Positions 3,382-49,089 of a DNA stretch of 64,000 nucleotides are shown here, piece by piece. This DNA is from Phyllobates terribilis (taxonomy: Eukaryota), in assembly GCF_046119375.1 (NCBI RefSeq), contig NW_027362761.1:1154192001-1154256000 (forward strand). The letters run 5' to 3'. Position numbers and translations under genes: made by a program. The notes below the pieces were generated by a model. The model searched no databases. It was not told where the DNA came from and worked only from the letters and a program-made list of their open reading frames with translations. The number at the start of each line of letters is the position of its first letter. Position 1 is the stretch's first letter.

Positions 3382-3513
3382 NNNNNNNNNNNNNNNNNNN
3401 NNNNNNNNNNNNNNNNNNNNNNNNNNNNNNNNNNNNNNNNNNNNNNNNNNNNNNNNNNNNNNNNNNNNNNNNNNNNNNNNNNNNNNNNNNNNNNNNNNNN
3501 NNNNNNNNNNNNN
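3382..3513. other. Assembly gap (132 N)
   Basis: Run of N. Confidence 1.
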
Positions 3514-4719
3514 CGCCCCCTGGGCCATATTCTTTAGTGGGAATATCCGGAGCCGGATCAGATGGGGGTTGTAGTCTTCCGAGTGGCTGTGACCCGGTCC
3601 GTGCCCAGGGTGTCAAACTCAGTTGTATGTGGCAGTCCTTACTGATGTTACTAAAGTTCTTTATGTCGACTACGCCACCCGTTGTATTGCGGTCACTATG
3701 GCCGCCGCTGCAGCAGGGTCCGCTGAGGCTGATGGTGTAGGTGCAGCTTGTGATGGTATAACCCCCAACGGTTGGGGTATAGCCTCAGGGGGTCAGGTGC
3801 AGAGGATGGGGGTTGTGGTGGTGCAGCGTAGATGTAAAATGAAGACAGAGTCGGGTTGTGCAGTTTAGGGTATTTACTCACTGCTGATGTTCCGGTCACT
3901 CCAGCTTCAAGTGACCACCCGAGCCGTGCTGCGTCCACCAGGTCCTGGATCCAGCCAACCCCCCAAACAAGTCCGGAGCGTGACCCTGAGCTCTCCTTCT
4001 GTCCTTTCCTCTGGCCGTCCCCACTAGTGATCCACCTAGGTCCAGCTCCCTCGGGCCTTCTGTTGGGAGACCCTTGGCCTTGGGTTCCCTGACCCTCCAC
4101 GTGGTATGCCTTCGGGGTGGATGTGGTGGGTGGCCGTGGCAGACACTGCCCACGGCCTCCGGTCTCTGGCTAGGGTGTGCTTTTGCCCCCACCAGCTTGG
4201 GATCCGGTACCCTTTTGCCAACTCTTCACCCGCTGATGGACTTTGGGTTCTCAGAGTTCCTTTTCTGTTTCCCCCTCTGGGTCTTTCTGGCTTTCTCCTC
4301 TCTCTCTCTCTGGGGCTGCTCTGCTCCTCTTCCTCTGACTTCTCACAGACTGACTGACTCCTCTGCAAAGACTGACCCTGTTCTTTGATGGTGCCCACCT
4401 TATATACACCCTCTATGTGTGAGCTCAGGTGACCAGCACCCAATGAGCTCCTATCTTTACCCAGGCTGCTCCCCCTATCTGCCCCTACACTACTTGGGAT
4501 GTTCCACCCCCCTCCCACTCCAGCCAGGAACAGACTCGGTCGTACCTGCACATTTCTAAGTGGGAGTACCGTCGGTCTGTTCCCCGGAAATGGGATGTAT
4601 GTAGTGCATGCAGCCTACCGAGCTCAGATCCACACTCCATCCTTACCCGGGAGTGGAATATCACACCTCTGGGTTGAGGTGCAATACCCCTGTAGCAGCC
4701 GAATCCTCAGGGTGCTACA
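3514..4719 (-). mobile_element. Solo LTR of the same family as 19840-21058; last few bases hidden in gap
   Basis: Reverse complement starts TGTAGCACCCTGAGGATTCGGCTGCTACAGGGG and ends ...CCCAGGGGGCG; collinear with the CSD-element LTR. Confidence 0.9.
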
Positions 4720-15431: not shown

Positions 15432-18400
15432 CAGTAAGTAATAAAAATGCCTTAAAACATTCTCTCCCTTTCATTATTCTGACATTTGGTAAATATTAAA
15501 AGATATGGTAATCCTAATTAACCTAAAACGGAAAGGTTTATTCTGATTTCATGTCAGATATTGAGAAAAACATGAATATGTGTCTTTTTATATAGTGTAT
15601 GTAAATTTCTAGTTTCAACTGTATGGGGTATTATTCGGTCACTATGTGCTAGTAGGTAATATCTGGTCCGGCCATGGTGTGACAGTATTTGTACCTTGTA
15701 TGTGGTATTATTAGTCATTTTTAGTGTTGAGCGAACATGCTCGACACTGCTCGGTACTCGCCCGAGCATCACGTTACTCGGGATGTTCGGCGAGCACCGA
15801 GCATTTCCGGGTTACTCGGGCGGGAGCTCAGGTCTCCGCCCTGCATGTTTGGCGCTCTTTACAGAGCCAATGAACATGCAGGGATTGCCAGCCAGTCACT
15901 GTAATGCCGCAGCCATGTTGGTTGTGGGCACTACATTGATTGGCTGGCCGCACAGCGTCACCTCGAGTATTTAAAACCGGGCGCCGCCATCTTGGACACA
16001 GACGGCTGGGATCAGACAGTGTAGGGACAGCGCTGCTGATTTAGGGAGAGATATATACTGCAAAATAGTTAGTGTAGGGTCTGTAAAGGCTGCCAGATCA
16101 AACAAACAGTCCTTCTCAGGACTAATATCCATCCCAGATATCAGGCAGGCAGGCTGTATAGGAGACGCAGTGGTTATACCAGCAAACGCTGCATTACAGT
16201 CCTGTGTGCTCCTGTTGCTGAAATTTCTGGACTTAGCTCCAGGTCTCGGGGGCCAGGAAAAATCCTTTTTTTTTATCTAAATCCTCTTTTTTTTTCCTCC
16301 TTCACACTGTACAAATACCCGTCTTATTAACCTTTTGGTGTCCCCCCCACGCCAAAAAAAAAAAAAAAGTGTGTCTGTGACAGTTCAGACACAAATATAT
16401 CTGTTGAAAATAGTCTGGTGTAGGCCAGAGAAACAGAAGTGTGGTTTTGCAGTTCCACGGTTCAAACCTCTGTATTTTCCACTTTTGGGCCATTTGTATC
16501 TAATGGTGTGTCGCTCACTGTTCAGCCGCAAATATATATATTTAAAACAGTCTGGTATCCACCAGTAAATTATAACTGTGGTTTTGCAGTTCCTCGGTAA
16601 AAAATCTCTATTATCCAGCTTTTGTTATTTTTTACGTAAAGAAACACAGTAATAGTTTCTCCCTGATTGTTCAGATTGTTTAAAAGAGTCGGGTGTAGGC
16701 CAGAGAAATAGAACTGTGGTTTTCCTCTTCCACGGTTCTAATCTACTTTTTATTACCCTTTTTCCATTGATAGTGCGAGTGTAAGCTATTTTACTTCCTT
16801 TACAATGGGTAAGGCACGTGGCAGGGGACGTGGAACTGGACGTTCTGGTGATGGTGCGTGCGGAGGACGGGGCCGTGACCATGGTGAAAATGTGCCACAA
16901 CCAACAGCCACATCTTCTCGCTCCCACTTCTTGACCGAATTACTAGGGAAGCACAGAACAACACCAGTATTGTGAACTGATCAGTGTGAACAGGTTATTA
17001 ATTGGATAGCAGATAATACTTCCAGTTACCTGGGCACCACCACCTCCGGTCTGTCTTCCACACGGTCAAATCTTAGTAGCCGTGAGTATCGACCGCATAC
17101 TCCTCCTCACCCTGATGCTCCTTCCTCCCACCATGCCGAGTGTCGTCAGACAGCAACTGATCCCACACTTGGACACTCTGAAGAGCTGTTCACTGGTCTA
17201 TTTCCATATTTGTGCCCCTCGCCTGCTCCGCTTGAAGTGGTGGAAGAGGAGATCCCATGTAGCGATGCCCAAATATTTGAACAGCCATGGCCAGAGGAAG
17301 TCGACGCTGGCAATTTGTCACAAGAGGTGGACGATGACGAGACACAATTGCCACGAAGTGAGGAGGAGGATCGTGGTGCGCAAGTGAAAAAGGAGGAGGT
17401 TGTGGATGATCTAGTAACTGACCCAACGTGGCAGGAGGACACGCAGAGCGAGGCCAGCAGCACACAGGGGGAGGGAGGCAGAGTACCCCAACAGGAAAGA
17501 AGAAGCAGTGTGGTGGCCACACACAGAAGGCAGGCAACAGTTCCCCGTAACACCAACACGAGGGACGTTGCCAGTACAACCTGTAGGTCTTACAGAGTCT
17601 GGAATTTTTTTAAAGACTCTGCTGATAACCCCAAAAAGGCCATTTGTACCACCTGCCAGGCCAGCATCAGCAGGGGTAACAAAACTACGAGCCTGACCAC
17701 CACCAGCATGATCAGGCACATGGCAGCAAAGCACCCGACTTTGTGGGGTGAACCCCAGGGTCCACGACCAGTGTCAGCGGGTGTCACCACTGCTTCTTCC
17801 ACTGTTGTGCGTGCAATACAACCCCCTGTTGTGTGTGCAAGGCAATCCCCTGTTCATACTGCATGCAAAGATGCCCCCTCCTCTCAGTCTTCACTTGTTA
17901 TGGCAGTTTGTCAAGAAACAGCATCAACGTCCACGTCCACGTCCCACCGCAGCGTTCAATTGTCCATATCCCAGAGCTTTGAACGAAAGTGGAAATTCGC
18001 AGCTAACGCCCCACAGGCCACAGTCCTGAATTCGCACATTTCACGAATGCTTGCGTTGGAAATGCTGCCTTTTGGGCTGGTGGAGAAGGAATCCTTCCGC
18101 AACCTTATGGCGGTGGCCGTCCCTCAGTACTCGGTCCCCAGCCGACACTATTTTGCCCGGTGTGCCATTCCCGCACTACACAAGCACGTGTCCCAAAACA
18201 TCTGCCGTGCCCTCAACAACGCAGTTACTGGGAGAGTCCACCTGACAACGGACACATGGACAAGTGCTTGTGGCCAGGGATGGTACATCTCCCTGATGGC
18301 ACACTGGGTAAACATAGTGGAAGCCGGGACCCAGTCGGACCTTGGGACGGAACACAAACTCCGCACACTGAGGATTGCGGGCCCTATGTCAGTCATAGTT

Positions 18401-19839
18401 GCCCCCACAGTGTACAGCTCCTGCGCATCCTCCTCCTCCTCCTCATGTTCAGCCTCCATCTCAGATATCACCACATCAGTTACAAGCTGGAAGCACTGCA
18501 GTACTGCCTCCGCCAAGCGGCAACAGGCTGTGCTGAGACTCATAAGCTTAGGTGAGAAACCTCACACTGCTTGTGAGTTGTGGACAGCTGTGAAATAGCA
18601 GGAAGATCTGTGGCTGAGACCGCTGAACCTACATCCAGGCATGGTGGTGCGTGACAATGGCCATAACCTGGTGGCGGCTCTGAGGCGAGGCGAGATCACA
18701 CACGTACCATGCATGGCTCATGTGCTTAACCTCGTGGTTCAGCGGTTTCTTATATCGTACCCCAAGTTACCAGATCTGCTCGTCAAAGTACGCCGCCTGT
18801 CAGCTCATTTTCGCAAGTCGGCTACAGCTTCCGCCGCCCTTGCTGTGTTGCGGCAGTGTTTGCAGCTTCCATCACACCCACTGGGTGTGATGTCCCCACA
18901 CGTTGGAACTCTACCCTTCACATGTTGCAAAGGATTTGTGAGCAGAAGAGAGCAGTTGTGGAGTACCAGCTGCAACAAGGCCGTCGATATTCAGGTCAGA
19001 CTCCACACATAAGACCTCAGGAGTGGACCTGGATGTCTGACATATGTACCATCTTGACAAACTTTGAGGAGTCCACCAAGATGGTGAGTGGCGATGACGC
19101 CATCATTAGCGTCAGCATTCCACTTGTCTGTCTTTTGAAACGCTCTCTGCAGAGAATTAAAGAGGAGGCATTGCAGCCAGAGTATGATGAGATGGATGAA
19201 GAAGCCATTGCGGTCGATTACACACAGCCCAGCCTCATCTCATCCCAATGTGCATTGGGGGACAATGAGGGAGAGGAGGAGGAGGAGGAAGAACAGGAGT
19301 TTGTATCACGTGCTGTAAATGGTAGTACCTGTACAACTGTCATACCGTCGGTTCAGCGTGGGTGGCCTGAGGACAGAGGGGAGGAGGAGGAGAGCATGGT
19401 CAGTCGTCATCTTGGTGAGTACACGGAAGTCTTGCCCGTTACCAGTATGGCACGCATGGCTGACTTTATGTTACGCTGCCTTAACCGTGACCCTCGCGTT
19501 GTCAAAATGTTGGGTGACAGTCATTACTGGTTGGTGACACTTTTAGACCCCCGCTACAAGGAGAACTTTCACTCTCTTATTCCTGAGGTGGAGAGGTCTA
19601 CAAAAATGGGGCAGTACCAGAAGGCCCTTGCTGCAGAACTGTTAAAAAAATTCCCATCTGAACACGCTAGCAGCAGAGGTCACAGTTCGTTGCCCAACTA
19701 AGGCGTACATGCGAGAGAGACACAACTCCAATCCAGCACAGGCAGGGGAACACTGTCAACGTTCTGGGACAGTTTTCTCAGACCCTCCCGGGGTACTCTC
19801 ACAAGGAGTGGAAAGTTTCAAAAGATGGTGAGGGAGTAC

Positions 19840-21058
19840 TGTAGCACCCTGAGGATTCGGCTGCTACAGGGGTATTGCACCTCAGCCAGAGGTGTGATAT
19901 TCCACTCCCGGTAAGGATGGAGTGTGGAGCTGAGCTCAGAAAGCTGCATGCACTACACACATCCCATTTCCGGAGGGCAGACCAACGGTACTCCCACTTA
20001 GAAATGTGCAGGTACGACCGAGTCTGTCCTTGGCTGGAGTGGGAGGGGGGTGGACCATCCCAGTAGTGTAGGGGCAGATAGGGGGAGCAGTCTGGGTAAA
20101 GCTAGGAGCTCATTGGGTGCTGGTCACCTGAGCTCACACATAGAGGGAGTATATAAGGTGGGCACCATCTAAGATCAGGGTCAGTCTGTGAGAAGTCAGC
20201 CTGTTGTAGTGAAGACTTTGCAGAGCAGTGGAAGAAAGCAGAGGAGCAGAGCAGCCCCAGGCCCAGAGTGAGAGAGGAGAGAACGAAAGACCCAGAGGGG
20301 GAGAAAGAAGGAACTCTGAGAGCCCAAATACAACCACAGGGTGAAGAGTTGGCAACAGGGTACCGGATCCCAAACTGGTGGGGGCTACAGCATACCTCAG
20401 CCAGAGACCGGAGGCCGTGGGCAGCATCTGCCACGGCCACCCACCAAATCCACCCGGAAGGCAGACCACGCATAGGGTCAGGGAACCCAGAGGCAAGGGT
20501 TCGCCAACAAGAGGCCCGAGGGAGCCGGACATAGGTGGATCCCTGGTGGGGAAGGCCAGAGACGAGGACAGAAAGGGAGCTCAGAACCACGCTCCAGAAC
20601 TACTTGGGGGTTGGCCGAGTCCAGGACCTGGTGGACGCAGCGCGGCTCGGGTGGTCACTCAAGGCCGGAGTGACCGGTACAAGAACAGCAGTAAGTAAAG
20701 AACCCTGAACTGCACAACCCGACTCTGACTCTCATTACCATCTTCCCTGCACTTCCACAACCACCATCCTCTGCACCTGACCCCCCTGAGGCTATACCCC
20801 TCCCGTTGGGGGTTATACTACCTAAGCTGCACAAATACCATCAGCCTCAGCGGACCCTGCTGCAGCGGCGGCCGTAGTGACCGCAGTTCAACGGGTGGCG
20901 TAGTCGACATAAAGAACTTTAGTAACATCAGTAAGGACTGCCACACACTGAGCTTGACACCCTGGGCACGGACCGGGTCACAGCCACTCGGAGACTACAA
21001 CCCCCATCTGATCCGGCTCCGGGTATCCCCCAACAACACTGGCCCAGGGGGCGCGTCA
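19840..21058 (+). repeat. 5' LTR (1219 bp)
   Basis: TGTAGCACCC...GGGGGCGCGTCA; by eye 4 substitutions and 1 indel versus the 3' LTR. Confidence 0.96.
20112..20156 (+). promoter_or_regulatory. Putative LTR promoter: inverted CCAAT (ATTGG) and TATATAA; AGTAAA (possible polyA signal) ~20694
   Basis: Motif match and position only. Confidence 0.45.
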
Positions 21059-21062
21059 ACTT

Positions 21063-21081
21063 TGGCGTAGTCGGCAGGATT
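21063..21081 (+). promoter_or_regulatory. Primer-binding site complementary to the tRNA-Ser 3' end
   Basis: TGGCGTAGTCGGCAGGATT, 4 nt after the LTR; complement of ...AATCCTGCCGACTACGCCA (vertebrate tRNA-Ser end recalled from memory). Confidence 0.9.
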
Positions 21082-21275
21082 ACGTGCCCACAACAACCGG
21101 GTACTGCGTGCCTGAAGAAAAGTTCACCGTTACCTTAAAAAGGAGTCTCCTGCCGGTTCCGGAGGGTCCCCGCCATCGGGCCCCATCACAGGTCGTTTCC
21201 CGCCGGTTGTCCGCCATTTGCAGCTTTTTCCCGCCATTTCCAAAGATTTCCCGCCTTGGAAGAGCGGACGCCATT

Positions 21276-23045
21276 ATGGGCGTGCCAGAGGGTGGCAAGA
21301 GGCCACCTCCCATCGTGGGCCAGGTCGAAGAATGGCGCCAAAAGCGGAAACCGCGCCCACCAACAGGGACTGTGATGCTGGAAGTGTCCATCAGCATAAG
21401 AGAACTGCCCCTGGAACTGACAATCACAAAGTTGCCCCGGGACCACCCTAGATGTGGGCGGAGACAGAAGAAGAGAACAAAGATGGGTGTCGCCTGGAGC
21501 AGTCTGGAGAGAGCGCACCCGGAGACAAGACGTCTGGAAGAGAGTCCAGAGAAAACACACCCGGAGATGGAGGGAGAGCCAGGCAGCACCGACCCAACGG
21601 TCAGGAGCCTGATGCGGGTCGCCACTCCAGGCAGCACCGACCCAGTGGTCAGGAGCCTGTTGCAGGTCGCCACTCCAGAAGGCCTGCTGGAGATCCTAAC
21701 ACAGCTCCCCCGAGACCGGGAGTGTGCACAGACTGCGCTGGAGGGCCTCGCACAGAGGTTGGCCCGGGTGCAGCGAGAGACGTTGGCGGAGTGGAGCCGA
21801 GAGATGGCCCAGCAGACCGAGACTCGTCAGCGGAGCACGCCACCCGAGACGAGGAGACAGACCGCCTCTGAGGATGGCGCAGGAGGACTGAAGGCCGGAG
21901 ACGGTGCCGAGAAGGGAGCCGAAGGAATGGAGGCAGGTAAAGGGGACGTCACTACCCCGCAACGGGAAACCGCGTGCCTGCCCCAGCTCCCCGTCGCAGA
22001 GCCCGAAGTACCCCCTGCCGTGCCCGTCGCTGCAACGTCACCGCCGCAGACTAGGCCTCAAACGGAAGCCGCGACCCCTGTGACGTCACACGCCTCGACC
22101 CCGAGCGTGGCCAAGCAGGAAGTACCATCGGCCTGGTCGCAAGGCCTAGTACCCCCGGGCGCCGCAATACCAACAGCGCCCCCTACCTCCGCGGATCCCC
22201 CGGCCTGGTCGCAGGGCCAAGTAACACAGGGCGCCGCCGTTCTTACGGTGCCCTTTACTTTCAAAGTGCCCCAGGCCTGGTCGCAAGGCCTGGTTAACCC
22301 GGGCGCCGCTACCACCACGGCGCCCATAACACCTAAAGTACCGCACCTGGGTGAGGACCTGTTCGCCCAGCATACGTGCCCGGATGGGCAGCCCTTCGTA
22401 TGGCCCCAGGAATACATCCAGCTGGAGCTGCAAAAAGCAAGGGCCATGTGCGAACCCCTGATCCCGGCTCCAAAGCCCATGAAGAGGATCTCGCCCCCGC
22501 TAGAAGAGACCCAGTTTGAGTGGGATCCCACCGGAGAAGACCTTATGGGGTTCACTCAGGAGACTCGGGCAGCCGCAGCGGAGCGTGCAGAGTGCTGCCG
22601 CCAGCAGCTCGAGGTCTTTGAGAGGGAGCGGAGAGAGAGGCGGGTCCGGGAACAACAAGCCCAAATAAGGAGCGCGGAGCAGAAGAGCCGGACCAGGAGA
22701 GACCCCCGTGCAGCGCATGGTCCCCGAACCATCGGGACTGTAATAAAATTTAATCTGCAGCATGGGTGGGGTTTCATCAGGGATCACCGCACCCCAGGCG
22801 ACGTCTTCGTGACCAGGAGAGACGTTGAGTCCCACCTACCGGAGGGACACAGAGGACGTGACCTGTATTTAGGGGACGAGGTCACCTTCACCCGGCACAA
22901 GTGTGCCAAAGGACCCTACGCCCTCCATGTGCATCGCCTGACGGAGGAGGAGCTGCGGTGTGAGGAGGAGCAAGAGGACCCGGACGGGTCTGAACCAGAA
23001 CCTGGAACCAATCACAAAGAAAGAGCAGGAGGACGACGTCGTTGA
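21276..23045 (+). CDS. 589-aa protein (frame open from 21084): predicted helical and Pro/Ala/Thr-rich regions, C-terminal cold-shock domain (22731-22940)
   Basis: IGTVIKFNLQHGWGFIRDHRTPGDVFVTRRDV...LYLGDEVTFTRHKCAKGPYALHVHRL fits CSD pattern G.V..FN...G.GFI......DVFV...G..V.F...KGP.A..V; uninterrupted frame; true start codon uncertain. Confidence 0.85.
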   Translation: MGVPEGGKRPPPIVGQVEEWRQKRKPRPPTGTVMLEVSISIRELPLELTITKLPRDHPRCGRRQKKRTKMGVAWSSLERAHPETRRLEESPEKTHPEMEGEPGSTDPTVRSLMRVATPGSTDPVVRSLLQVATPEGLLEILTQLPRDRECAQTALEGLAQRLARVQRETLAEWSREMAQQTETRQRSTPPETRRQTASEDGAGGLKAGDGAEKGAEGMEAGKGDVTTPQRETACLPQLPVAEPEVPPAVPVAATSPPQTRPQTEAATPVTSHASTPSVAKQEVPSAWSQGLVPPGAAIPTAPPTSADPPAWSQGQVTQGAAVLTVPFTFKVPQAWSQGLVNPGAATTTAPITPKVPHLGEDLFAQHTCPDGQPFVWPQEYIQLELQKARAMCEPLIPAPKPMKRISPPLEETQFEWDPTGEDLMGFTQETRAAAAERAECCRQQLEVFERERRERRVREQQAQIRSAEQKSRTRRDPRAAHGPRTIGTVIKFNLQHGWGFIRDHRTPGDVFVTRRDVESHLPEGHRGRDLYLGDEVTFTRHKCAKGPYALHVHRLTEEELRCEEEQEDPDGSEPEPGTNHKERAGGRRR

Positions 23046-23470
23046 GTACGGTAGTATAGAGACTGTATATAGTTGCCCGTCGGGGCACAGTGAACCGTTG
23101 CTGCTAATATAGTCCCCGTTGGGACCAGAGAACTGAACTGTTAACCCGTGTGTCCCTATTCCCCACTGACCGAGGACTGAGAGCGGTCATCCCTTTCCTA
23201 ATACCTGGCCGAGGACTGAGAGCGGCCATATCCCCTTGTATATAGTTGCGCTTCCTAAAGCGCCCCCTACCGGTTTTATAGGAAACCGTGTTTCTTCAAG
23301 AGACTGTCGCACTTTACCCGGTCACAAGTTGCACCGTGACCGGAGGTACCAGAAGACAAGAATGTTTTTATGAAAAGTTTTATATGATGTTTTATTATGT
23401 TGTTTATGCAAAAATTGTATGTTTTGGTGTTGTTTATATCTTACAGCCCGAGGACGTGCTGTGGTTTACC

Positions 23471-23479
23471 AGGGGGGAA
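23471..23479 (+). promoter_or_regulatory. Polypurine tract
   Basis: AGGGGGGAA directly before the 3' LTR. Confidence 0.85.
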
Positions 23480-24699
23480 TGTAGCACCCTGAGGATTCGG
23501 CTGCTACAGGGGTATTGCACCTCAGCCAGAGGTGTGATATTCCACTCCCGGGTAAGGATGGAGTGTGGAGCTGAGCTCAGAAAGCTGCATGCACTACACA
23601 CATCCCATTTCCGGAGGGCAGACCAACGGTACTCCCACTTAGAAATGTGCAGGTACGACCGAGTCTGTCCTTGGCTGGAGTGGGAGGGGGGTGGACCATC
23701 CCAGTAGTGTAGGGGCAGATAGGGGGAGCAGTCTGGGTAAAGCTAGGAGCTCATTGGGTGCTGGTCACCTGAGCTCACACATAGAGGGAGTATATAAGGT
23801 GGGCACCATCTAAGATCAGGGTCAGTCTGTGAGAAGTCAGCCTGTTGTAGTGAAGACTTTGCAGAGCAGTGGAAGAAAGCAGAGGAGCAGAGCAGCCCCA
23901 GGCCCAGAGTGAGAGAGGAGAGAACGAAAGACCCAGAGGGGGAGAAAGAAGGAACTCTGAGAGCCCAAATACAACCACAGGGTGAAGAGTTGGCAACAGG
24001 GTACCGGATCCCAAACTGGTGGGGGCTACAGCATACCTCAGCCAGAGACCAGAGGCCGTGGGCAGCATCTGCCACGGCCACCCACCAAATCCACCCGGAA
24101 GGCAGACCACGCATAGGGTCAGGGAACCCAGAGGCAAGGGTTCGCCAACAAGAGGCCCGAGGGAGCCGGACATAGGTGGATCCCTGGTGGGGAAGGCCAG
24201 AGACGAGGACAGAAAGGGAGCTCAGAACCACGCTCCAGAACTACTTGGGGGTTGGCCGAGTCCAGGACCTGGTGGACGCAGCGCGGCTCGGGTGGTCACT
24301 CAAGGCCGGAGTGACCGGTACAAGAACAGCAGTAAGTAAAGAACCCTGAACTGCACAACCCAACTCTGACTCTCATTACCATCTTCCCTGCACTTCCACA
24401 ACCACCATCCTCTGCACCTGACCCCCCTGAGGCTATACCCCTCCCGTTGGGGGTTATACTACCTAAGCTGCACAAATACCATCAGCCTCAGCGGACCCTG
24501 CTGCAGCGGCGGCCGTAGTGACTGCAATTCAACGGGTGGCGTAGTCGACATAAAGAACTTTAGTAACATCAGTAAGGACTGCCACACACTGAGCTTGACA
24601 CCCTGGGCACGGACCGGGTCACAGCCACTCGGAGACTACAACCCCCATCTGATCCGGCTCCGGGTATCCCCCAACAACACTGGCCCAGGGGGCGCGTCA
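23480..24699 (+). repeat. 3' LTR (1220 bp)
   Basis: Direct repeat of 19840-21058, followed by GTAC TSD. Confidence 0.96.
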
Positions 24700-25289
24700 G
24701 TACCTTGCCAACCTTACCGGCGTCCTTCGTGATTCCTCTGTGCCTGTTAATTATTGGGTATCCAAGCTGGATACTTGGAATGAACTCGCTCTGTACACCT
24801 TGGAGGTCCTGGCCTGCCCTGCCGCTAGCGTGCTATCGGAGCATGTTTTTAGTGTTTTTAGTGCCGCTGGGGGAATTATAACTGATAAGCGCACTCGCCT
24901 GTCAACTGACAATGCCGACAAGCTGACCCTTATCAAAATGAACAAGGGCTGGATTGGGCTAGACTTCTCATCACCACCAAATGACAGCAGAGTAACATAA
25001 AGTCAAATCCACTGTGTTATTTCGGGAGGTGTATTCACATGCACCGCTTCACACCCACACATGGGTATACGCTTCCTCATTTCGGCTGTTTTATGTTCTT
25101 CTCCTTATCCTCAGCCTCCACCACCACTATACCACCAGGGTGACCGTGGTCTTTGTTGCCATTATTGAAAGTTCCTGCGTCCTTATTTTTGTCAGCTTTT
25201 GCTTGGAAGGCATAAGCAAAGACTGGGAGACCCACTCCCCAATAATGGGAATAATATTTTTAAGATGCTGTATTGTATGGCTCTTGTAA

Positions 25290-26075
25290 GGGGAATTAAA
25301 ACCGTCATGTTAAGCTACTGTGACCTCCACCACTTTTCCAAGGGGCATTAAAACCGTCTTGTTAAGCTACTGTGACCTCCACCACTTTTCCAAGGGGCAT
25401 TAAAACCGTCTTGTTAAGCTACTGCGACCTCCACCACTTTTCCAAGGGGCATTAAAACTGTCTTGTTAAGCTACTGTGACCTCCACGTCTCTTCCGAGGG
25501 GCATTAAAATCGCCTTGTTGAGCTACTGTGACCTCCACATCTCTTCCGAGGGGCATTAAAACCGTCTTGTTAAGCTACTGTGACCTCCACCACTTTTCCA
25601 AGGGGCATTAAAACCGTCTTCTTAAGCTACTGTGACCTCCACGTCTCTTCCGTGGGGCATTAAAACCGTCTTTTTAAACTACTGTGACCTCCACGTCTCT
25701 TCCGAGGGGCATTAAAACCGTCTTGTTAAGCTACTGTGACCTCCACGTCTCTTCCGACGGGCAATAAAACCATCTTGCTAAGCTACTGTGACCTCCACCA
25801 CTTTTCCAAGGGGCATTAAAACCGTCTTGTTAAGCTACTGTGAGCTCCACATCTCTTCCGAGGGGCATTCAAACCGTCTTGTTAAGCTACTGGGACCTCC
25901 ACATCTCTTTCGAGGGGCATTAAAACCTTCTTGTTAAGCTACTGTGACCTCCATGTCTCTTCAAAGGGGCATTAAAAGCGTCTTCATAAACCACTCTGAA
26001 CTCCACAGCTCTTCCAAGGGGCATTGAAATGTTGTTTTTAATTACCTCTAACCTCCACGACTCTTCCAACGGGCA
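25290..26075. repeat. 52-bp tandem array (~15 units) inside the hAT, downstream of the transposase
   Basis: ACCGTC at 25301, 25353, 25405...; unit ACCGTCTTGTTAAGCTACTGTGACCTCCAC(CACTTTTCCAA/GTCTCTTCCGA)GGGGCATTAAA. Confidence 0.93.
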
Positions 26076-29700: not shown

Positions 29701-32163
29701 TGACGCGCCCCCGGGGCCGTGGGGTACTCGATGCCGGGCCGGTCGTTGCTAGGGGAGATGTCACAGTGGCGGTGACCCAGTCCATGACCCAGGGCAGTCA
29801 ATCAAAAAGGGGAATTATTTACAGGGGATTTATAGTTCTTATATATATAGTTCGTGACGCCACCTGTGGCATGCGGCTATATGGAGCCGCCGCTGCTGTG
29901 CAGAACCTCTGGAGCTGATGTTTAGTGCAGCCGAGTTGGTTCAGCTCTCCACAGGCAGAGCTTAGCTCCAGGGCAGAGAATGGTGATGCTGGGCGTTGTA
30001 GTGCAGGGGTGATGGCACAGATAATAATCACAGAGACAGTGGGGTGCAGTCTTCAGGGTCTTTACTCACGGTTGTTGCATTTCAAGTTACAGGTACCAGT
30101 GTAACTTCCCTCGTCGTGCTGCGCTTACTCAGGGAGGGGTTCAGCCAACCCTCAGATATCTCCGGAGTACTTAGCGGGACCCCCTTCTGTGTGTTCTCTC
30201 TCTCTGGCCGTCTCCCTGTGTAGCGCCCCGAGGGTTCGGTTGCTACAGGGGTATTGCACCTCAACCAGAGGTGTGGTATTCCATTCCCAGTTACGGATGG
30301 AGTATGGACCAGGGCTCAGTTAGCTGCATACACCACACACACCCCATTTCCGGGGGACAGCTCTACGGTGCTCCCATTTATATATATATGCAGGCACATC
30401 TGACTATGTCCCTGGCTGGAGTGGGGAGGGGGGAGAGAACCCAGTGGTGTAGGAGCAGAAGGGGACGGTTTCTGGAGCATAGGAAGGAGCTCATTGGTTG
30501 CAGGTCACCTGAGCTCAGACACAGAGAAGCAGATAAAAAGGTGGGGGCCATCTTAGGAGAGAGTTCAGTGTTCTGTGAGAGGAGAAGGCAGGGAGCAGAG
30601 CTGCTGCATGGGCTCTGCTCCCTGGGCAGGCCTAGCACAGAGGCCGGAGCCTGAGGGAAAAGAGAAGAAGGAGATGGAAGGAAAGAGGACAAAAAGAGGA
30701 GTAGAAAGGCTCCAGAAACAAGAAGGCAGAAGGGACCCTAAGAACCCACGAGATATCGGGTGAAGGGTCGGGCAGAATAAGGGTACCGGATTCCCAAGTT
30801 GGTGGAGGTAAATTATCCCTCAGCCAAAGACCGGAGGTCGTGATCATCTATTGGTGCGACCCCCTGCTACACCCGCTAGGAAGGCACCACAAAGGGTCAG
30901 GGAAACGGGCGATAGGTTTCACCAAGAGAAGGCCCGAGGCAGCTGGACAGAAGTGTGGTCACTGGTGGGGCACGAGAGGCCGGAGAAAGGACAGAAGGGG
31001 GTCCTGTGCCATACTCCTGAATTGCCTGGGGGTTGACCGAGCTCCTCACCTAGTGGACGCAGCATGGCTTGGGCAGTCATTCCCTGCAGAAGTGACTCGG
31101 ATAACAACTGTGAGTAAAAGACCCTGGACTGCAACACGTTGTCTCTGTGTTTCTTACCGCGCCAGCACTAACGGTACTGGGACGCACTGCACCACAACCC
31201 CCACCATCTATGCTCACTGCCCTGAGGCTACACTCCTCCCGTGGGGAGTTATACTATTCTCTGCTGCACCCACAATACCAGCCTCAGCGGTCTGCCCTGC
31301 AGCGGCGGTTCACTCTGACCGCAATCCACGGGTGGCGTAGTCAGACATTCATAACTATACTAATAGACTGCCACAGCATTTGGTCTGACCACCCTGAGCC
31401 ACAGGATCGGGTTGCCACTACTACCCCCATCATCACACTGAAGCCCGATTCCGAGTGCCCCACGGCCCACTCACCTGCACCTCATACCTAATGTCCCAAT
31501 CCAGTACCCGCGGGCCTTCTCGGGCGATGTCTGTTCCGTCCCCTGGGTCCTCTATAGCTACCTTCTTGGTGAGACTGATATGAACTGTTGGCTACAGGAC
31601 TTGAAATACTGCAGCCTCCGGTTTCTAGTTGAGTCATAAAGCACTCTGCTAGTTGAGGGACCGGTCCCCTTTGTGTGGCCTGACCCCTCCACCTCCTGGT
31701 GGATTTGGGCGTACGGGTGGCCTCCAGCACTGCCCGTACCCCTGGGGTCCCTTCTTCCGTTCCTGGAGCCCTTCCTGCTCCTCTCCTTCTTCTTCAGTCC
31801 TGGGCCTCTCCTCAGGCCCTCCTCCTGAGCAGAGCTCCTGAAGAGCCTCTGCTCCTAGCACTACTCCTCTCAGACTGATCTGACTAAAACAAGATGGCTT
31901 CTCTATTTATACCTTCCTTTCATGTGCTCCCCTAATCTGCTTCCTCCACCCACACCCACTACATGGTTCCACCCTTCAGCTAGGGACGAGGGACTGTGCT
32001 CTCCCTTAGGAGCAATCTCACCCTGCCCTCCACTGAAGCGGAATGTGTTGGATGCAGGTGTTAGGGTCCCGGGCAGCACTCCCTCCTTACCTGAGAGTGA
32101 GATACCACACCTCTGGGTGAGATGCAGTACCTCTGTGGCGACAGAACCCTCAGGGGCGCCACA
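29701..32163 (-). mobile_element. Divergent solo LTR of the same broad family, split by a second LTR
   Basis: Minus strand TGTGGCGCCCCTG...GGGGGCGCGTCA; perfect TSD TACG (29697-29700, 32164-32167); ~1.2 kb once the insert is removed. Confidence 0.85.
30219..31469 (+). mobile_element. Solo LTR inserted in opposite orientation inside the previous LTR; last ~12 bp lost
   Basis: TGTAGCGCCCCGAGGGTTCGGTTGCTACAGGGG start; collinear with 19840-21058 up to ...CACGGCCCA. Confidence 0.85.
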
Positions 32164-46716: not shown

Positions 46717-46873
46717 NNNNNNNNNNNNNNNNNNNNNNNNNNNNNNNNNNNNNNNNNNNNNNNNNNNNNNNNNNNNNNNNNNNNNNNNNNNNNNNNNNNN
46801 NNNNNNNNNNNNNNNNNNNNNNNNNNNNNNNNNNNNNNNNNNNNNNNNNNNNNNNNNNNNNNNNNNNNNNNNN
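46717..46873. other. Assembly gap (157 N)
   Basis: Run of N. Confidence 1.
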
Positions 46874-47561: not shown

Positions 47562-49089
47562 TAGTGATGAGCGAGCATGCTTGTTTAACCCTTTCACCGA
47601 GTACGCTCGGATGCTTACCAAGTAGCTTCGGCATGCTCGTATATTATGCTGGAGTCCCTGCGTCTGCATGATTTACAGCTGTTGGACAGCCTCAACACAT
47701 GCAGGGATTGCCTGTTTGTTAGGGAATCCTCACATATGTTGAGGCTGTCTTACAGCAATAAATCATGCAGACGCAGGGACTTGAACATAATATACAAGCA
47801 CGCCAGTGAAAGGGTTAAACGAGTGACTCGCCCCCTGGGCCGTGGGGCACTCGAGACCGGACTTCAGGGCAATGCTGGGAGTAGTAGTGGCGACCCGGTC
47901 CCGTGGCTCAGGGTGGTCAGACCAGTGGTAGTCTGTGATGAGCTGTAGGTAATGTCCGACTACGCCACCCGTGGATTGCGGCTATTATGAACCGCCGCTG
48001 CAAGGCAGTCCACTGAGGCTGATGGTGTGTGCAGCTGAGGTAGTGTAACTCCCCACGGGAAGAGTGCAGCCCCAGGGCAGTGTAGAGGATGGTGGGGTTG
48101 ATGGTGCAGAGAGTCCCAGTGCCGTTAGTGCTGGAGGAGCAAGGAGTACACAGACAACGTACTGCAGTCCAATGGCTTTTACTCACAGTTCATATGCTCC
48201 GGGTCACTTCAGCGCAAGCAGTGACCACCCAAGCCGTGCGGTGTCCACCAGGTGAGGGACTCGGTCAATCCCCAGGCACTTCAGGAGTATGGTTCAGAGC
48301 TCCTTCCTATCCTTCCTTCGGCTCATGCCCCGCCAGTGACCAAGCTTTTGTCCAGCTCCCGCAGGTCTATGCGCGCAAACGTGGGCCCCGTTTCCCGCTG
48401 CCCTATATGGTATGCCTTCCTAGCAAGGTTTAGCAAGGGGTCGCACCAAGTGATGGTCGCGACTTCCGGTTCTTGGCTGAAGATTATTAGCTTCCACCAA
48501 ATTGGGATCCGGTACCCTCTTCTTGCCTGACCCTTCCACCTTCTTGTTCCTGAGCCCTTCTGTTTCTTGGCCACTTCTTTCCCTTCTCCTGTTCCTTCTC
48601 TTCTCCTCCGTTCCTTCTCCTCCCAGGCCCCGGCCTTTTCTCTAGGCCTGCCTCTGAGCAGAGCTCCTACAGAGCCTCTGCTCCCTGTCTTCTCTTCTCT
48701 CTGTACTTCCCTGACAGAACTGGCCCTGATCTAAGATGGTGCCCACCTTTTATACCTCCCTCTAGAACATGAGCCCAGGTGACCAGCAACCAATGGGCTC
48801 CTACCTACGCTCAGGAACCGTCCCCTTCTGCTCCTACATCACCGGGTTTTCCTCCCCCCTCCCCACTCCAGCCAGGGACAGATTCTGTAGTGCCTGCATT
48901 ACTGTCTAATGGGAGGACCGTTGAGCTGTCCCTCGGAAATGGGGTGTGTGTGATGCATGCAGCTAACTGAGCCCTGGTCCATACTCCATCCTTACCCCGG
49001 AGTGGAATATCACACCTCTGGCAGAGGTGCAATACCTCTGCAGCGACCGAGCCCTCGGGGCGCTACACGAGCACGCTCGCTCATCACTA
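47562..49089. mobile_element. hAT MITE interrupted by a solo LTR
   Basis: TAGTGATGAGCGAGC / GCTCGCTCATCACTA; perfect TSD ATTGTTAC. Confidence 0.9.
47824..49067 (-). mobile_element. Solo LTR of the CSD-element family (1244 bp)
   Basis: Minus strand TGTAGCGCCCCGAGG...GGGGGCGAGTCA; perfect TSD CGAG. Confidence 0.9.

What the first reader, a model, noticed from the sequence alone, without database searches (positions are those of the whole stretch)
19840..24699. Young, intact LTR retroelement whose only ORF encodes a cold-shock-domain protein instead of recognisable Gag/Pol
Seen: 1.2-kb LTRs differing by about 4 substitutions and 1 indel, GTAC TSD, tRNA-Ser PBS, PPT, and a 2.4-kb interior holding one uninterrupted ORF (589 aa from ATG 21276). 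No PR, RT, RNase H, IN or CCHC knuckle is visible, but a clear CSD lies at 22731-22940 (RNP1-like GWGFI, RNP2-like DVFV, KGPYA end). Its loop after DVFV is long, as in eukaryotic Y-box CSDs; K replaces the W of KWF and T replaces the H of FVH. Established: CSDs (YBX1/YBX2-FRGY2, Lin28, CspA) bind single-stranded nucleic acids and act as RNA chaperones; Y-box proteins mask mRNA in frog oocytes. Inference: a trans-mobilised non-autonomous family that keeps its own RNA-binding protein, possibly a nucleocapsid substitute, packaging aid or germline anti-silencing/translation factor. The frame is intact while neighbouring transposases are decayed. I do not know of CSD-encoding LTR elements, but cannot confirm novelty without searching.
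Basis: partly seen in the sequence, partly recalled or inferred. Interest (0 to 1): 0.92.

Follow-up and report, generated by a model that had tools for sequence, protein, structure and literature searches.

The report
Helper-dependent frog retroelement encoding cold-shock protein
A recently inserted, helper-dependent LTR retroelement of a poison-frog-like genome carries as its only gene a conserved cold-shock-domain RNA-binding protein instead of Gag/Pol; this is unusual, but cold-shock domains have already been reported in bird endogenous retroviruses.

Summary
Window 19840-24699 is a complete 4.86-kb LTR element. Its LTRs (1219 and 1220 bp) differ by 4 substitutions and 1 indel. It has TG..CA ends, a GTAC duplication, a 19-nt site complementary to tRNA-Ser(AGA), and a purine tract.

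The single ORF (589 aa from ATG 21276) matches only Pfam CSD, above the curated cut-off. The predicted structure is a five-strand barrel that superposes on CspA and YB-1. It follows an Arg/Glu-rich helix and a long disordered N-terminus. No Gag, capsid, zinc knuckle, PR, RT or IN was found.

Related elements with near-identical LTRs and intact ORFs occur in Phyllobates terribilis and Anomaloglossus baeobatrachus. Ranitomeya variabilis has a rearranged copy and R. imitator a decayed one. Against the Phyllobates copy, dN/dS is 0.27 overall and 0.07 in the CSD, and all seven ORF indels are in frame.

It is therefore a selected gene of an active, non-autonomous family. My inference is that the protein binds the element's own RNA to aid helper-driven mobilisation. 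This was not tested, and no helper was found.

Novelty is moderate. A 2025 study reports 46 CSD-encoding bird ERVs, but none that is pol-less with a CSD gene as its only ORF.

The parts
19836..19839 (+). 5' copy of the 4-bp target-site duplication (GTAC)
   Evidence: Read directly. Identical to 24700-24703.
19840..21058 (+). 5' LTR, 1219 bp, TG...CA
   Evidence: 99.7% identical to the 3' LTR: 4 substitutions and 1 indel.
19840..19868 (+). 7-bp hairpin at the first bases of U3 (19840-19846 pairs with 19862-19868)
   Evidence: Seven LTR copies from three genomes; 100% of cells paired; 2 pairs with compensatory changes.
20150..20156 (+). TATATAA, candidate TATA box, which would give a U3 of about 340 bp
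   Evidence: Read from the sequence. Not tested.
21063..21081 (+). Primer-binding site complementary to the 3' end of tRNA-Ser(AGA), 4 nt after the LTR
   Evidence: Unique in the window. Identical to the first 19 nt of published tRNA-Ser(AGA) antisense probes.
21082..21275 (+). Leader. It holds three TTCCCGCC motifs (21197-21255) and three CCGCCAT motifs (21170-21237)
   Evidence: Only one other TTCCCGCC in 64 kb. The Phyllobates copy has five in the same place. Conserved at nucleotide level: dS 0.14, dN/dS 0.8.
21276..23045 (+). Only long ORF, 589 aa, ATG in a good context (A at -3, G at +4)
   Evidence: 73% aa identity to the P. terribilis copy, dN/dS 0.27, all 7 indels multiples of 3.
21579..21674 (+). 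Two in-frame 48-nt repeats inside the ORF (disordered N-terminal part)
   Evidence: The Phyllobates copy has three units.
22129..22344 (+). Three in-frame 72-nt repeats inside the ORF (Pro/Ala-rich disordered part)
   Evidence: All three units are also present in the Phyllobates copy.
22557..22700 (+). Arg/Glu-rich long helix (aa 428-475) directly before the CSD
   Evidence: AlphaFold2 pLDDT 78-93. Composition R 26%, E 17%. Present in all family members.
22734..22934 (+). Cold-shock domain (aa 487-553)
   Evidence: Pfam CSD above the curated cut-off. Foldseek top 50 PDB hits are all CSDs; CspA TM 0.88, rmsd 1.7 A. dN/dS 0.07.
23046..23470 (+). 3' untranslated interior with conserved blocks, including an 18-nt box at 23444-23461 after a T-rich tract
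   Evidence: The box is invariant in the window, P. terribilis and Anomaloglossus copies.
23471..23479 (+). Polypurine tract AGGGGGGAA abutting the 3' LTR
23480..24699 (+). 3' LTR, 1220 bp
24700..24703 (+). 3' copy of the target-site duplication (GTAC)

Best explanation
Shown. This is a young insertion of a non-autonomous LTR retroelement, about 0.8-1.6 My old by LTR divergence. It has the cis equipment of a class-I-like endogenous retrovirus: TG..CA LTRs, a 4-bp duplication, a tRNA-Ser primer site and a G-rich purine tract. Its one gene encodes a protein with a disordered N-terminal half, an Arg/Glu-rich helix, a Y-box-length cold-shock domain and an acidic tail with a basic end. The gene belongs to a family of such elements in dendrobatoid frogs and has been kept by purifying selection while the elements kept transposing.

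Inferred. Protease, reverse transcriptase, integrase and probably the capsid shell come in trans from an unidentified autonomous retrovirus-like element that recognises the same LTR ends, primer site and leader. The CSD protein is made from the element's own full-length RNA and binds single-stranded nucleic acid, most likely that same RNA. In that role it would act as chaperone, stabiliser or packaging adaptor and raise this parasite's share of the helper's particles. That is functionally comparable to a nucleocapsid domain or to LINE-1 ORF1p. The CSD itself was probably taken from a host Y-box-type gene long ago.
For: Complete LTR anatomy.

No PR, RT, RNase H, IN, Gag or CCHC. Pfam at E <= 1 gives only CSD. 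PDB phmmer of the N-terminal 458 aa finds nothing. Foldseek against PDB and BFVD returns only CSDs. No CCHC regex match.

CSD fold at pLDDT 86-95 in the core model.

Relatives occur in four other genomes. Their LTRs are 100% identical in P. terribilis and 99.5% identical in Anomaloglossus, and their ORFs are intact.

dN/dS is 0.27 overall and 0.07 in the CSD. ORF indels are 27, 48, 6, 3, 3, 3 and 6 nt, whereas LTR and UTR indels are mostly not multiples of 3.

Thirty-one columns of the helix+CSD core are invariant across lineages whose N-termini no longer align.

The loop length matches YB-1 with a 1-residue gap, against a 5-residue gap to a bacterial Csp. YB-1 is the top profile hit.

At least four further LTRs of the same superfamily lie in this 64-kb window, so the family is abundant.
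Against: There is no evidence of transcription, translation or nucleic-acid binding.

The YB-1 base-stacking residues W65 and H87 are replaced in every family member (K/A/D/S and T/A/N). The ligand or binding mode may therefore differ.

No autonomous partner was found, so trans-mobilisation is deduced only from the missing genes.

Only five copies from five genomes were examined.

Y-box ancestry is not resolved: CspA scores as well as YB-1 (31.0 against 31.2 bits).

The LTRs and leader are more conserved than silent sites of the ORF (K2P 0.15-0.18 against dS 0.65). This is unexplained.
Confidence: 0.5

Rival explanations
1. Transduced host gene acting on the cell rather than on the element's RNA. 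A Y-box-like regulator was captured the way oncogenes are captured by defective retroviruses. It benefits the element or its helper by altering host translation, mRNA masking, proliferation or silencing in germline cells.
For: The layout LTR-leader-single fused ORF-LTR is that of replication-defective transducing retroviruses (established knowledge). The bird ERV study found repeated CSD capture and proposed a benefit to retroviral proliferation (PMC12287698). The loop is Y-box-like. Selection on the ORF is equally compatible with this reading.
Against: No close host progenitor turned up among 1.84 billion representative proteins. The nearest hits outside the family are dinoflagellate multi-CSD proteins. 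The canonical Y-box stacking residues are lost family-wide. The persistence of several deeply diverged element lineages suits a role in the element's own cycle, but does not exclude a host-directed one.
Confidence: 0.2
2. A very divergent Gag. The N-terminal two thirds would be a degenerate matrix/p12/capsid, and the CSD would replace the zinc-knuckle nucleocapsid. The element would then make its own particles and borrow only Pol, like gag-only plant elements.
For: The ORF sits exactly where gag sits, about 200 nt after the PBS. It starts with Met-Gly. It has a Pro-rich disordered stretch like p12. A nucleic-acid-binding domain lies at the C-terminal end, where NC lies.
Against: There is no Gag Pfam hit at E <= 1, no PDB sequence hit, and no capsid-like helical domain in the AlphaFold2 model: residues 1-123 and 187-377 are below pLDDT 50. 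Foldseek finds no Gag or capsid match in PDB or BFVD. N-termini of the family lineages do not align with each other. The Gly-2 context does not fit the myristoylation preference in the Phyllobates copy. The single PTAP is not conserved. The alignment is shallow (5 sequences), so absence of a fold is weak evidence.
Confidence: 0.15
3. A passenger ORF without function: an open frame that survives because the copies are young and GC-rich, or a host gene that merely lies between two solo LTRs.
For: The ORF is 62% G+C, which lowers stop-codon frequency. Only a few copies were seen. One copy (R. imitator) is broken into three frames.
Against: P(open by chance) is about 5e-9. dN/dS is 0.27 with dS 0.65. 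All seven indels are in frame. The CSD core is invariant across lineages with 35-45% identity. PBS and PPT abut the LTRs, and a matching duplication shows one insertion event rather than two solo LTRs.
Confidence: 0.05

Closest known systems
CSD-encoding endogenous retroviruses of birds (Mol Biol Evol 2025, PMC12287698)
   Same: Retrovirus-like LTR elements carrying a Pfam PF00313 cold-shock domain of cellular type. Capture was recurrent and was interpreted as beneficial to the retrovirus.
   Different: The bird elements were found and classified through their RT (ERV-A/B and ERV-G groups), so they carry pol. The CSD sits at varying positions. No selection analysis is described in the text read. 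Here the host is a frog, pol and gag are absent, the CSD protein is the only gene, and purifying selection is measured. Whether the frog and bird CSDs are related was not testable, because no bird sequences were at hand.
Non-autonomous LTR elements mobilised in trans (mouse ETn/MusD and VL30, plant LARD/TRIM, gag-only BARE-2)
   Same: They keep LTRs, PBS and PPT, lack pol, and depend on a helper (established knowledge).
   Different: ETn, VL30, LARD and TRIM have no conserved protein. BARE-2 keeps a true Gag. This family keeps a non-Gag RNA-binding protein.
Replication-defective transducing retroviruses (gag-onc type)
   Same: LTR-leader-one fused ORF containing cellular sequence-LTR, dependent on a helper.
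   Different: Those are short-lived somatic variants. This is a germline family that has diversified across two frog families with the insert under long-term selection.
LINE-1 ORF1p and retroviral nucleocapsid (functional analogues only)
   Same: An element-encoded nucleic-acid-binding or chaperone protein with a long helix next to a small RNA-binding domain, expected to coat its own RNA.
   Different: No homology: ORF1p uses a coiled coil plus RRM plus CTD, and NC uses CCHC knuckles. The helix here is Arg/Glu-rich with few hydrophobic positions, so a coiled coil is doubtful.
Vertebrate Y-box proteins (YBX1/YBX2-FRGY2)
   Same: CSD with the extended loop after the DVFV strand; YB-1 is the best profile hit in PDB. 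There is also a Pro/Ala-rich region before the domain and a charged tail after it.
   Different: Only about 31-35% identity. The W and H stackers are replaced. The family has its own invariant GWGFI motif and its own invariant loop motif. The N-terminus is much longer, and the gene is single-exon and LTR-borne.

Membership tests
LTR retrotransposon / endogenous retrovirus (structural definition) | Two direct long terminal repeats ending TG...CA | tested here: met
   1219 and 1220 bp, 99.7% identical.
LTR retrotransposon / endogenous retrovirus (structural definition) | Target-site duplication flanking the pair | tested here: met
   GTAC on both sides. ACAA in the Phyllobates copy.
LTR retrotransposon / endogenous retrovirus (structural definition) | tRNA primer-binding site after the 5' LTR and polypurine tract before the 3' LTR | tested here: met
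   19-nt match to tRNA-Ser(AGA). AGGGGGGAA at 23471-23479.
Autonomous retrovirus / LTR retrotransposon | Encodes protease, reverse transcriptase/RNase H and integrase | tested here: not met
   One ORF only. Pfam at E <= 1 gives CSD alone.
Retroviral Gag | Capsid (CA) fold or Gag family signature | tested here: not met
   No Pfam, PDB or Foldseek match; no helical globular domain predicted. The shallow alignment limits the weight of this result.
Retroviral Gag | CCHC zinc knuckle in the nucleocapsid | tested here: not met
   Regex found none.
Class I (gamma/epsilon-like) ERV | 4-bp target duplication | tested here: met
   Window, L001 and the solo LTR at 47826-49067 have 4 bp. The L003 copy looks like 5 bp.
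Class I (gamma/epsilon-like) ERV | Placement of pol in the class I clade | not testable with these tools
   The element has no pol and its helper was not found.
Cold-shock domain, Pfam PF00313 | Profile score above the curated cut-off | tested here: met
   31.3-31.5 bits against 27. All 5 family members match.
Cold-shock domain, Pfam PF00313 | Five-stranded OB-type beta-barrel | tested here: met
   AlphaFold2 pLDDT 86-95. TM 0.88 and rmsd 1.7 A to CspA.
Cold-shock domain, Pfam PF00313 | RNP1/RNP2 aromatic and His residues that stack on bases | tested here: inconclusive
   The two Phe are kept. The W and H equivalents are replaced in all members. A new invariant Trp lies in GWGFI.
Vertebrate Y-box protein family | Extended loop between strands 3 and 4 | tested here: met
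   1-residue gap to YB-1 against a 5-residue gap to a bacterial Csp.
Vertebrate Y-box protein family | Groups with YBX genes in a CSD phylogeny | not tested
   No frog YBX, LIN28, CSDE1 or CARHSP1 sequences were obtainable from the tools. Profile scores do not separate YB-1 from CspA.
Bird CSD-carrying ERVs | CSD within an ERV that also carries RT | tested here: not met
   No RT here. The bird set was defined by RT phylogeny.

The most novel reading that the evidence does not exclude
The CSD protein is a functional replacement for nucleocapsid/ORF1p that a pol-less LTR parasite encodes for itself. It would bind its own RNA in cis, perhaps at the repeated leader motif, and deliver it to a helper's particles. 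Frogs and birds would have acquired CSDs in retroelements independently, which would make the cold-shock domain a recurrent, selectable retroviral accessory module.
Probability: 0.3. Interest if true: 0.75.

Novelty: new variant of a known kind. Interest (0 to 1): 0.62.

Why it matters
Non-autonomous LTR elements are usually seen as protein-less hitch-hikers, or as carriers of a true Gag. A family that has discarded Gag and Pol yet preserves a host-type RNA-binding protein under selection, across two frog families, suggests a third strategy: the parasite invests in one protein that improves its access to a helper.

Together with the repeated CSD captures in bird ERVs, this would point to a general benefit of cold-shock domains for retroviral RNA handling. 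It also gives a simple system, one small gene and a 4.9-kb element, in which cis-preference and packaging competition can be tested.

Such families may also contribute to the very large, LTR-rich genomes of poison frogs.

Tried and rejected
Autonomous partner:
- The window and four related loci contain no RT or IN ORF linked to these LTRs.
- The other LTR copies in the window are solo or nested solo LTRs.
- Scans of IMG/VR with the protein profile and with the U5-PBS junction found nothing.
- The metagenome scan found only one unrelated CSD at 35% identity.

More family members:
- The word-indexed protein searches returned only the Phyllobates protein.
- The exhaustive search gave four frog proteins and then generic protist CSDs.

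Gag homology of the N-terminus: rejected as far as sequence and fold searches reach.

A second gene running from the 3' UTR into U3 (ORF 23288-23707): rejected, because the Phyllobates copy has a stop five codons after the conserved box.

PTAP late domain: not conserved.

Known RNA families in the element: none in Rfam at E <= 1.

Leader stability: not above shuffles, z = -1.5.

Repbase and Dfam could not be consulted, so a catalogued consensus under another name cannot be excluded.

Full report
1. The observation

A repeat search and a pairwise alignment show two direct repeats, at 19840-21058 and 23480-24699. They are 1219 and 1220 bp long and differ by four substitutions and one single-base indel. 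They begin TG and end CA. The four bases GTAC precede the first repeat and follow the second.

Four bases after the 5' LTR lies a 19-nt string at 21063-21081. It is unique in the window, with 0.01 matches expected by chance. It is identical to the first 19 nt of antisense probes published for human tRNA-Ser(AGA) (PMC13478228, PMC3299991). The tract AGGGGGGAA abuts the 3' LTR.

The K2P distance between the LTRs is 0.0033. That gives roughly 0.8-1.6 My, depending on the rate used; 1.03e-9 per site per year is the rate used in PMC12690878.

The element interrupts a decayed hAT transposon: a BED finger lies upstream and the hAT dimerisation domain downstream.

2. The gene

Between the LTRs there is one long frame, open from 21084, with a well-placed ATG at 21276 and a stop at 23043-23045. 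At its composition (62% G+C), the chance of 653 open codons is about 5e-9.

Pfam at E <= 1 reports a single family, CSD PF00313, at 31.3 bits against a curated cut-off of 27. It covers aa 487-553 of the 589-aa protein. There is no CCHC knuckle. The first 458 residues match nothing in the PDB even at E <= 10.

AlphaFold2 on the whole protein, with a five-sequence alignment, predicts three regions:
- Disorder for residues 1-123 and 187-377.
- A helix at 134-186 and a confident Arg/Glu-rich helix at 428-475.
- A five-stranded barrel at 484-554.

A second model of the conserved core reaches pLDDT 86-95 in the barrel.

Foldseek against the PDB returns only cold-shock domains in its first 50 hits. 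CspA gives TM 0.88 and rmsd 1.7 A; YBX1, YBX2, Lin28 and CRHSP-24 follow. Against predicted viral structures it returns only phage and giant-virus CSDs, with no Gag or capsid.

The alignment to YB-1 needs one gap residue in the long loop after the DVFV strand. A bacterial Csp needs five. A family profile ranks YB-1 first, but level with CspA (31.2 and 31.0 bits) and well above Lin28 and CRHSP-24 at about 20 bits. A Y-box origin is therefore plausible but not established.

The Trp of KWF and the His of FVH, both base-stacking residues in YB-1, are replaced here and in every relative. GWGFI and a loop motif are invariant.

3. Relatives

An exhaustive search of 1.84 billion representative proteins found four related frog proteins. 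After them come only generic multi-CSD proteins of dinoflagellates. The four frog proteins come from:
- Phyllobates terribilis (73% identical).
- Ranitomeya variabilis.
- Ranitomeya imitator.
- Anomaloglossus baeobatrachus.

The first three species are Dendrobatidae and the last is Aromobatidae.

The DNA around each was fetched:
- The Phyllobates gene lies in an element collinear with the window's over its whole length, at 78% nucleotide identity. Its 1247-bp repeats are 100% identical, it has the same Ser primer site, and its duplication is ACAA. The annotated protein is a truncated model; the real frame is open for 710 codons.
- The Anomaloglossus gene lies between 1284-bp LTRs that are 99.5% identical. 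It has a related primer site, a purine tract and the same LTR start.
- The R. variabilis copy has an intact ORF in a rearranged element.
- The R. imitator copy is broken into three frames.

This is therefore a family of elements that has been transposing recently in several genomes.

4. Selection

A codon alignment of the window and Phyllobates ORFs gives dN/dS 0.27 from the ATG and 0.07 in the CSD, with dS 0.65. All seven indels in the ORF are multiples of three (27, 48, 6, 3, 3, 3, 6 nt). Indels in the LTR and untranslated parts are mostly not.

Across the deeper lineages the N-terminal halves no longer align. The helix-plus-CSD core keeps 31 invariant columns.

The stretch upstream of the ATG is conserved as nucleotides rather than as protein (dS 0.14, dN/dS 0.8). 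Translation therefore most likely starts at 21276.

5. Cis elements seen along the way

- The leader holds three TTCCCGCC motifs within 60 nt. The Phyllobates copy has five, and only one other occurs in the 64 kb.
- An 18-nt box at 23444-23461, just before the purine tract, is invariant in three lineages.
- The first 29 nt of U3 form a 7-bp hairpin kept in seven LTR copies, with two compensatory pairs.
- The window also carries at least four more LTRs of the same superfamily, solo or nested.

6. Interpretation

The anatomy and the missing genes make this a non-autonomous element that must use a helper's enzymes. That step is a deduction, because no helper was found.

The element keeps one selected protein whose only recognisable domain binds single-stranded nucleic acids in all characterised relatives. 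From this I infer that the protein acts on the element's own RNA, as chaperone, stabiliser or packaging adaptor.

Three rivals remain:
- A host-directed regulator carried like a transduced gene.
- A Gag so diverged that it is unrecognisable, with the CSD in place of the nucleocapsid.
- A functionless passenger, which the selection data nearly exclude.

7. Comparison and novelty

Full-text searches found no report of a CSD in a frog or non-autonomous LTR element. They did find a 2025 study of bird ERVs in which 46 elements encode a Pfam CSD. Those CSDs were captured several times, in two ERV groups defined by RT (PMC12287698).

A CSD in a retrovirus-like element is therefore not new. What is new, as far as I can tell, is a pol-less and gag-less family whose sole gene is a CSD protein, with measured purifying selection, in amphibians. 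Repbase and Dfam could not be checked.

I rate it a new variant of a known kind, of moderate-to-good interest.

The two N runs in the window (3382-3513, 46717-46873) were left as they are.

Noticed in passing
window 19840-19868, and the same position in LTRs at 4719(-), 49067(-), 30219(+), 32163(-), L001:7941, L003:8451: A 7-bp hairpin formed by the very first bases of U3. Every copy can pair, and two pairs switch A-U to G-C in a compensatory way. Its function is unknown; it could serve at the integrase end or at plus-strand priming.
   Followed up: partly
window 21170-21255; L001 9322-9419: Cluster of TTCCCGCC (3 copies here, 5 in Phyllobates) and CCGCCAT motifs in the leader between the primer site and the ATG. 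They resemble E2F and YY1 DNA sites, or could be a repeated RNA-binding motif.
   Followed up: partly
window 23444-23461: An 18-nt box after a T-rich tract and 9 nt before the purine tract. It is invariant in the window, Phyllobates and Anomaloglossus elements, although their proteins are only 35-40% identical. It looks like a splice acceptor, but no conserved downstream frame exists.
   Followed up: partly
window 21012-21275; L001 9074-9442: The ORF's frame stays open upstream of the ATG, back through the primer site into U5, in both species. In the protein alignment the indels there are in frame. This reflects either nucleotide constraint or a non-AUG N-terminal extension.
   Followed up: partly
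window 19840-24699 against L001 7941-13031: The LTRs (K2P 0.18) and the leader (0.15) are more conserved between the two species' copies than silent sites of the ORF (dS 0.65).
   Followed up: no
window 16976-19701 and 24740-25000: The host site is a decayed hAT transposon, with a BED zinc finger upstream and the hAT dimerisation domain downstream, split by the insertion.
   Followed up: partly
window 3514-4719 (-): LTR 86% identical to the element's, flanked by CA/TG-rich simple repeats on both sides, with no purine tract. Its end runs into the N run 3382-3513, which was left untouched. Probably a solo LTR.
   Followed up: partly
window 47826-49067 (-): Solo LTR of a more distant subfamily (69% identical) with a 4-bp duplication, CTCG.
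   Followed up: partly
window 29850-32163: An LTR on the plus strand (30219 to about 31450) appears nested inside a minus-strand LTR of the Anomaloglossus-like subfamily (start at 32163, end near 29850).
   Followed up: no
window 25177-25996: Tandem array of a 52-bp unit (about 16 copies, 87-92% alike), just downstream of the hAT remnant.
   Followed up: no
L003 8446-8450 and 13320-13324: The Anomaloglossus copy seems to have a 5-bp duplication (GGCCC), whereas three other insertions have 4 bp. Its primer site differs from the Ser(AGA) site, and its tRNA was not identified.
   Followed up: no
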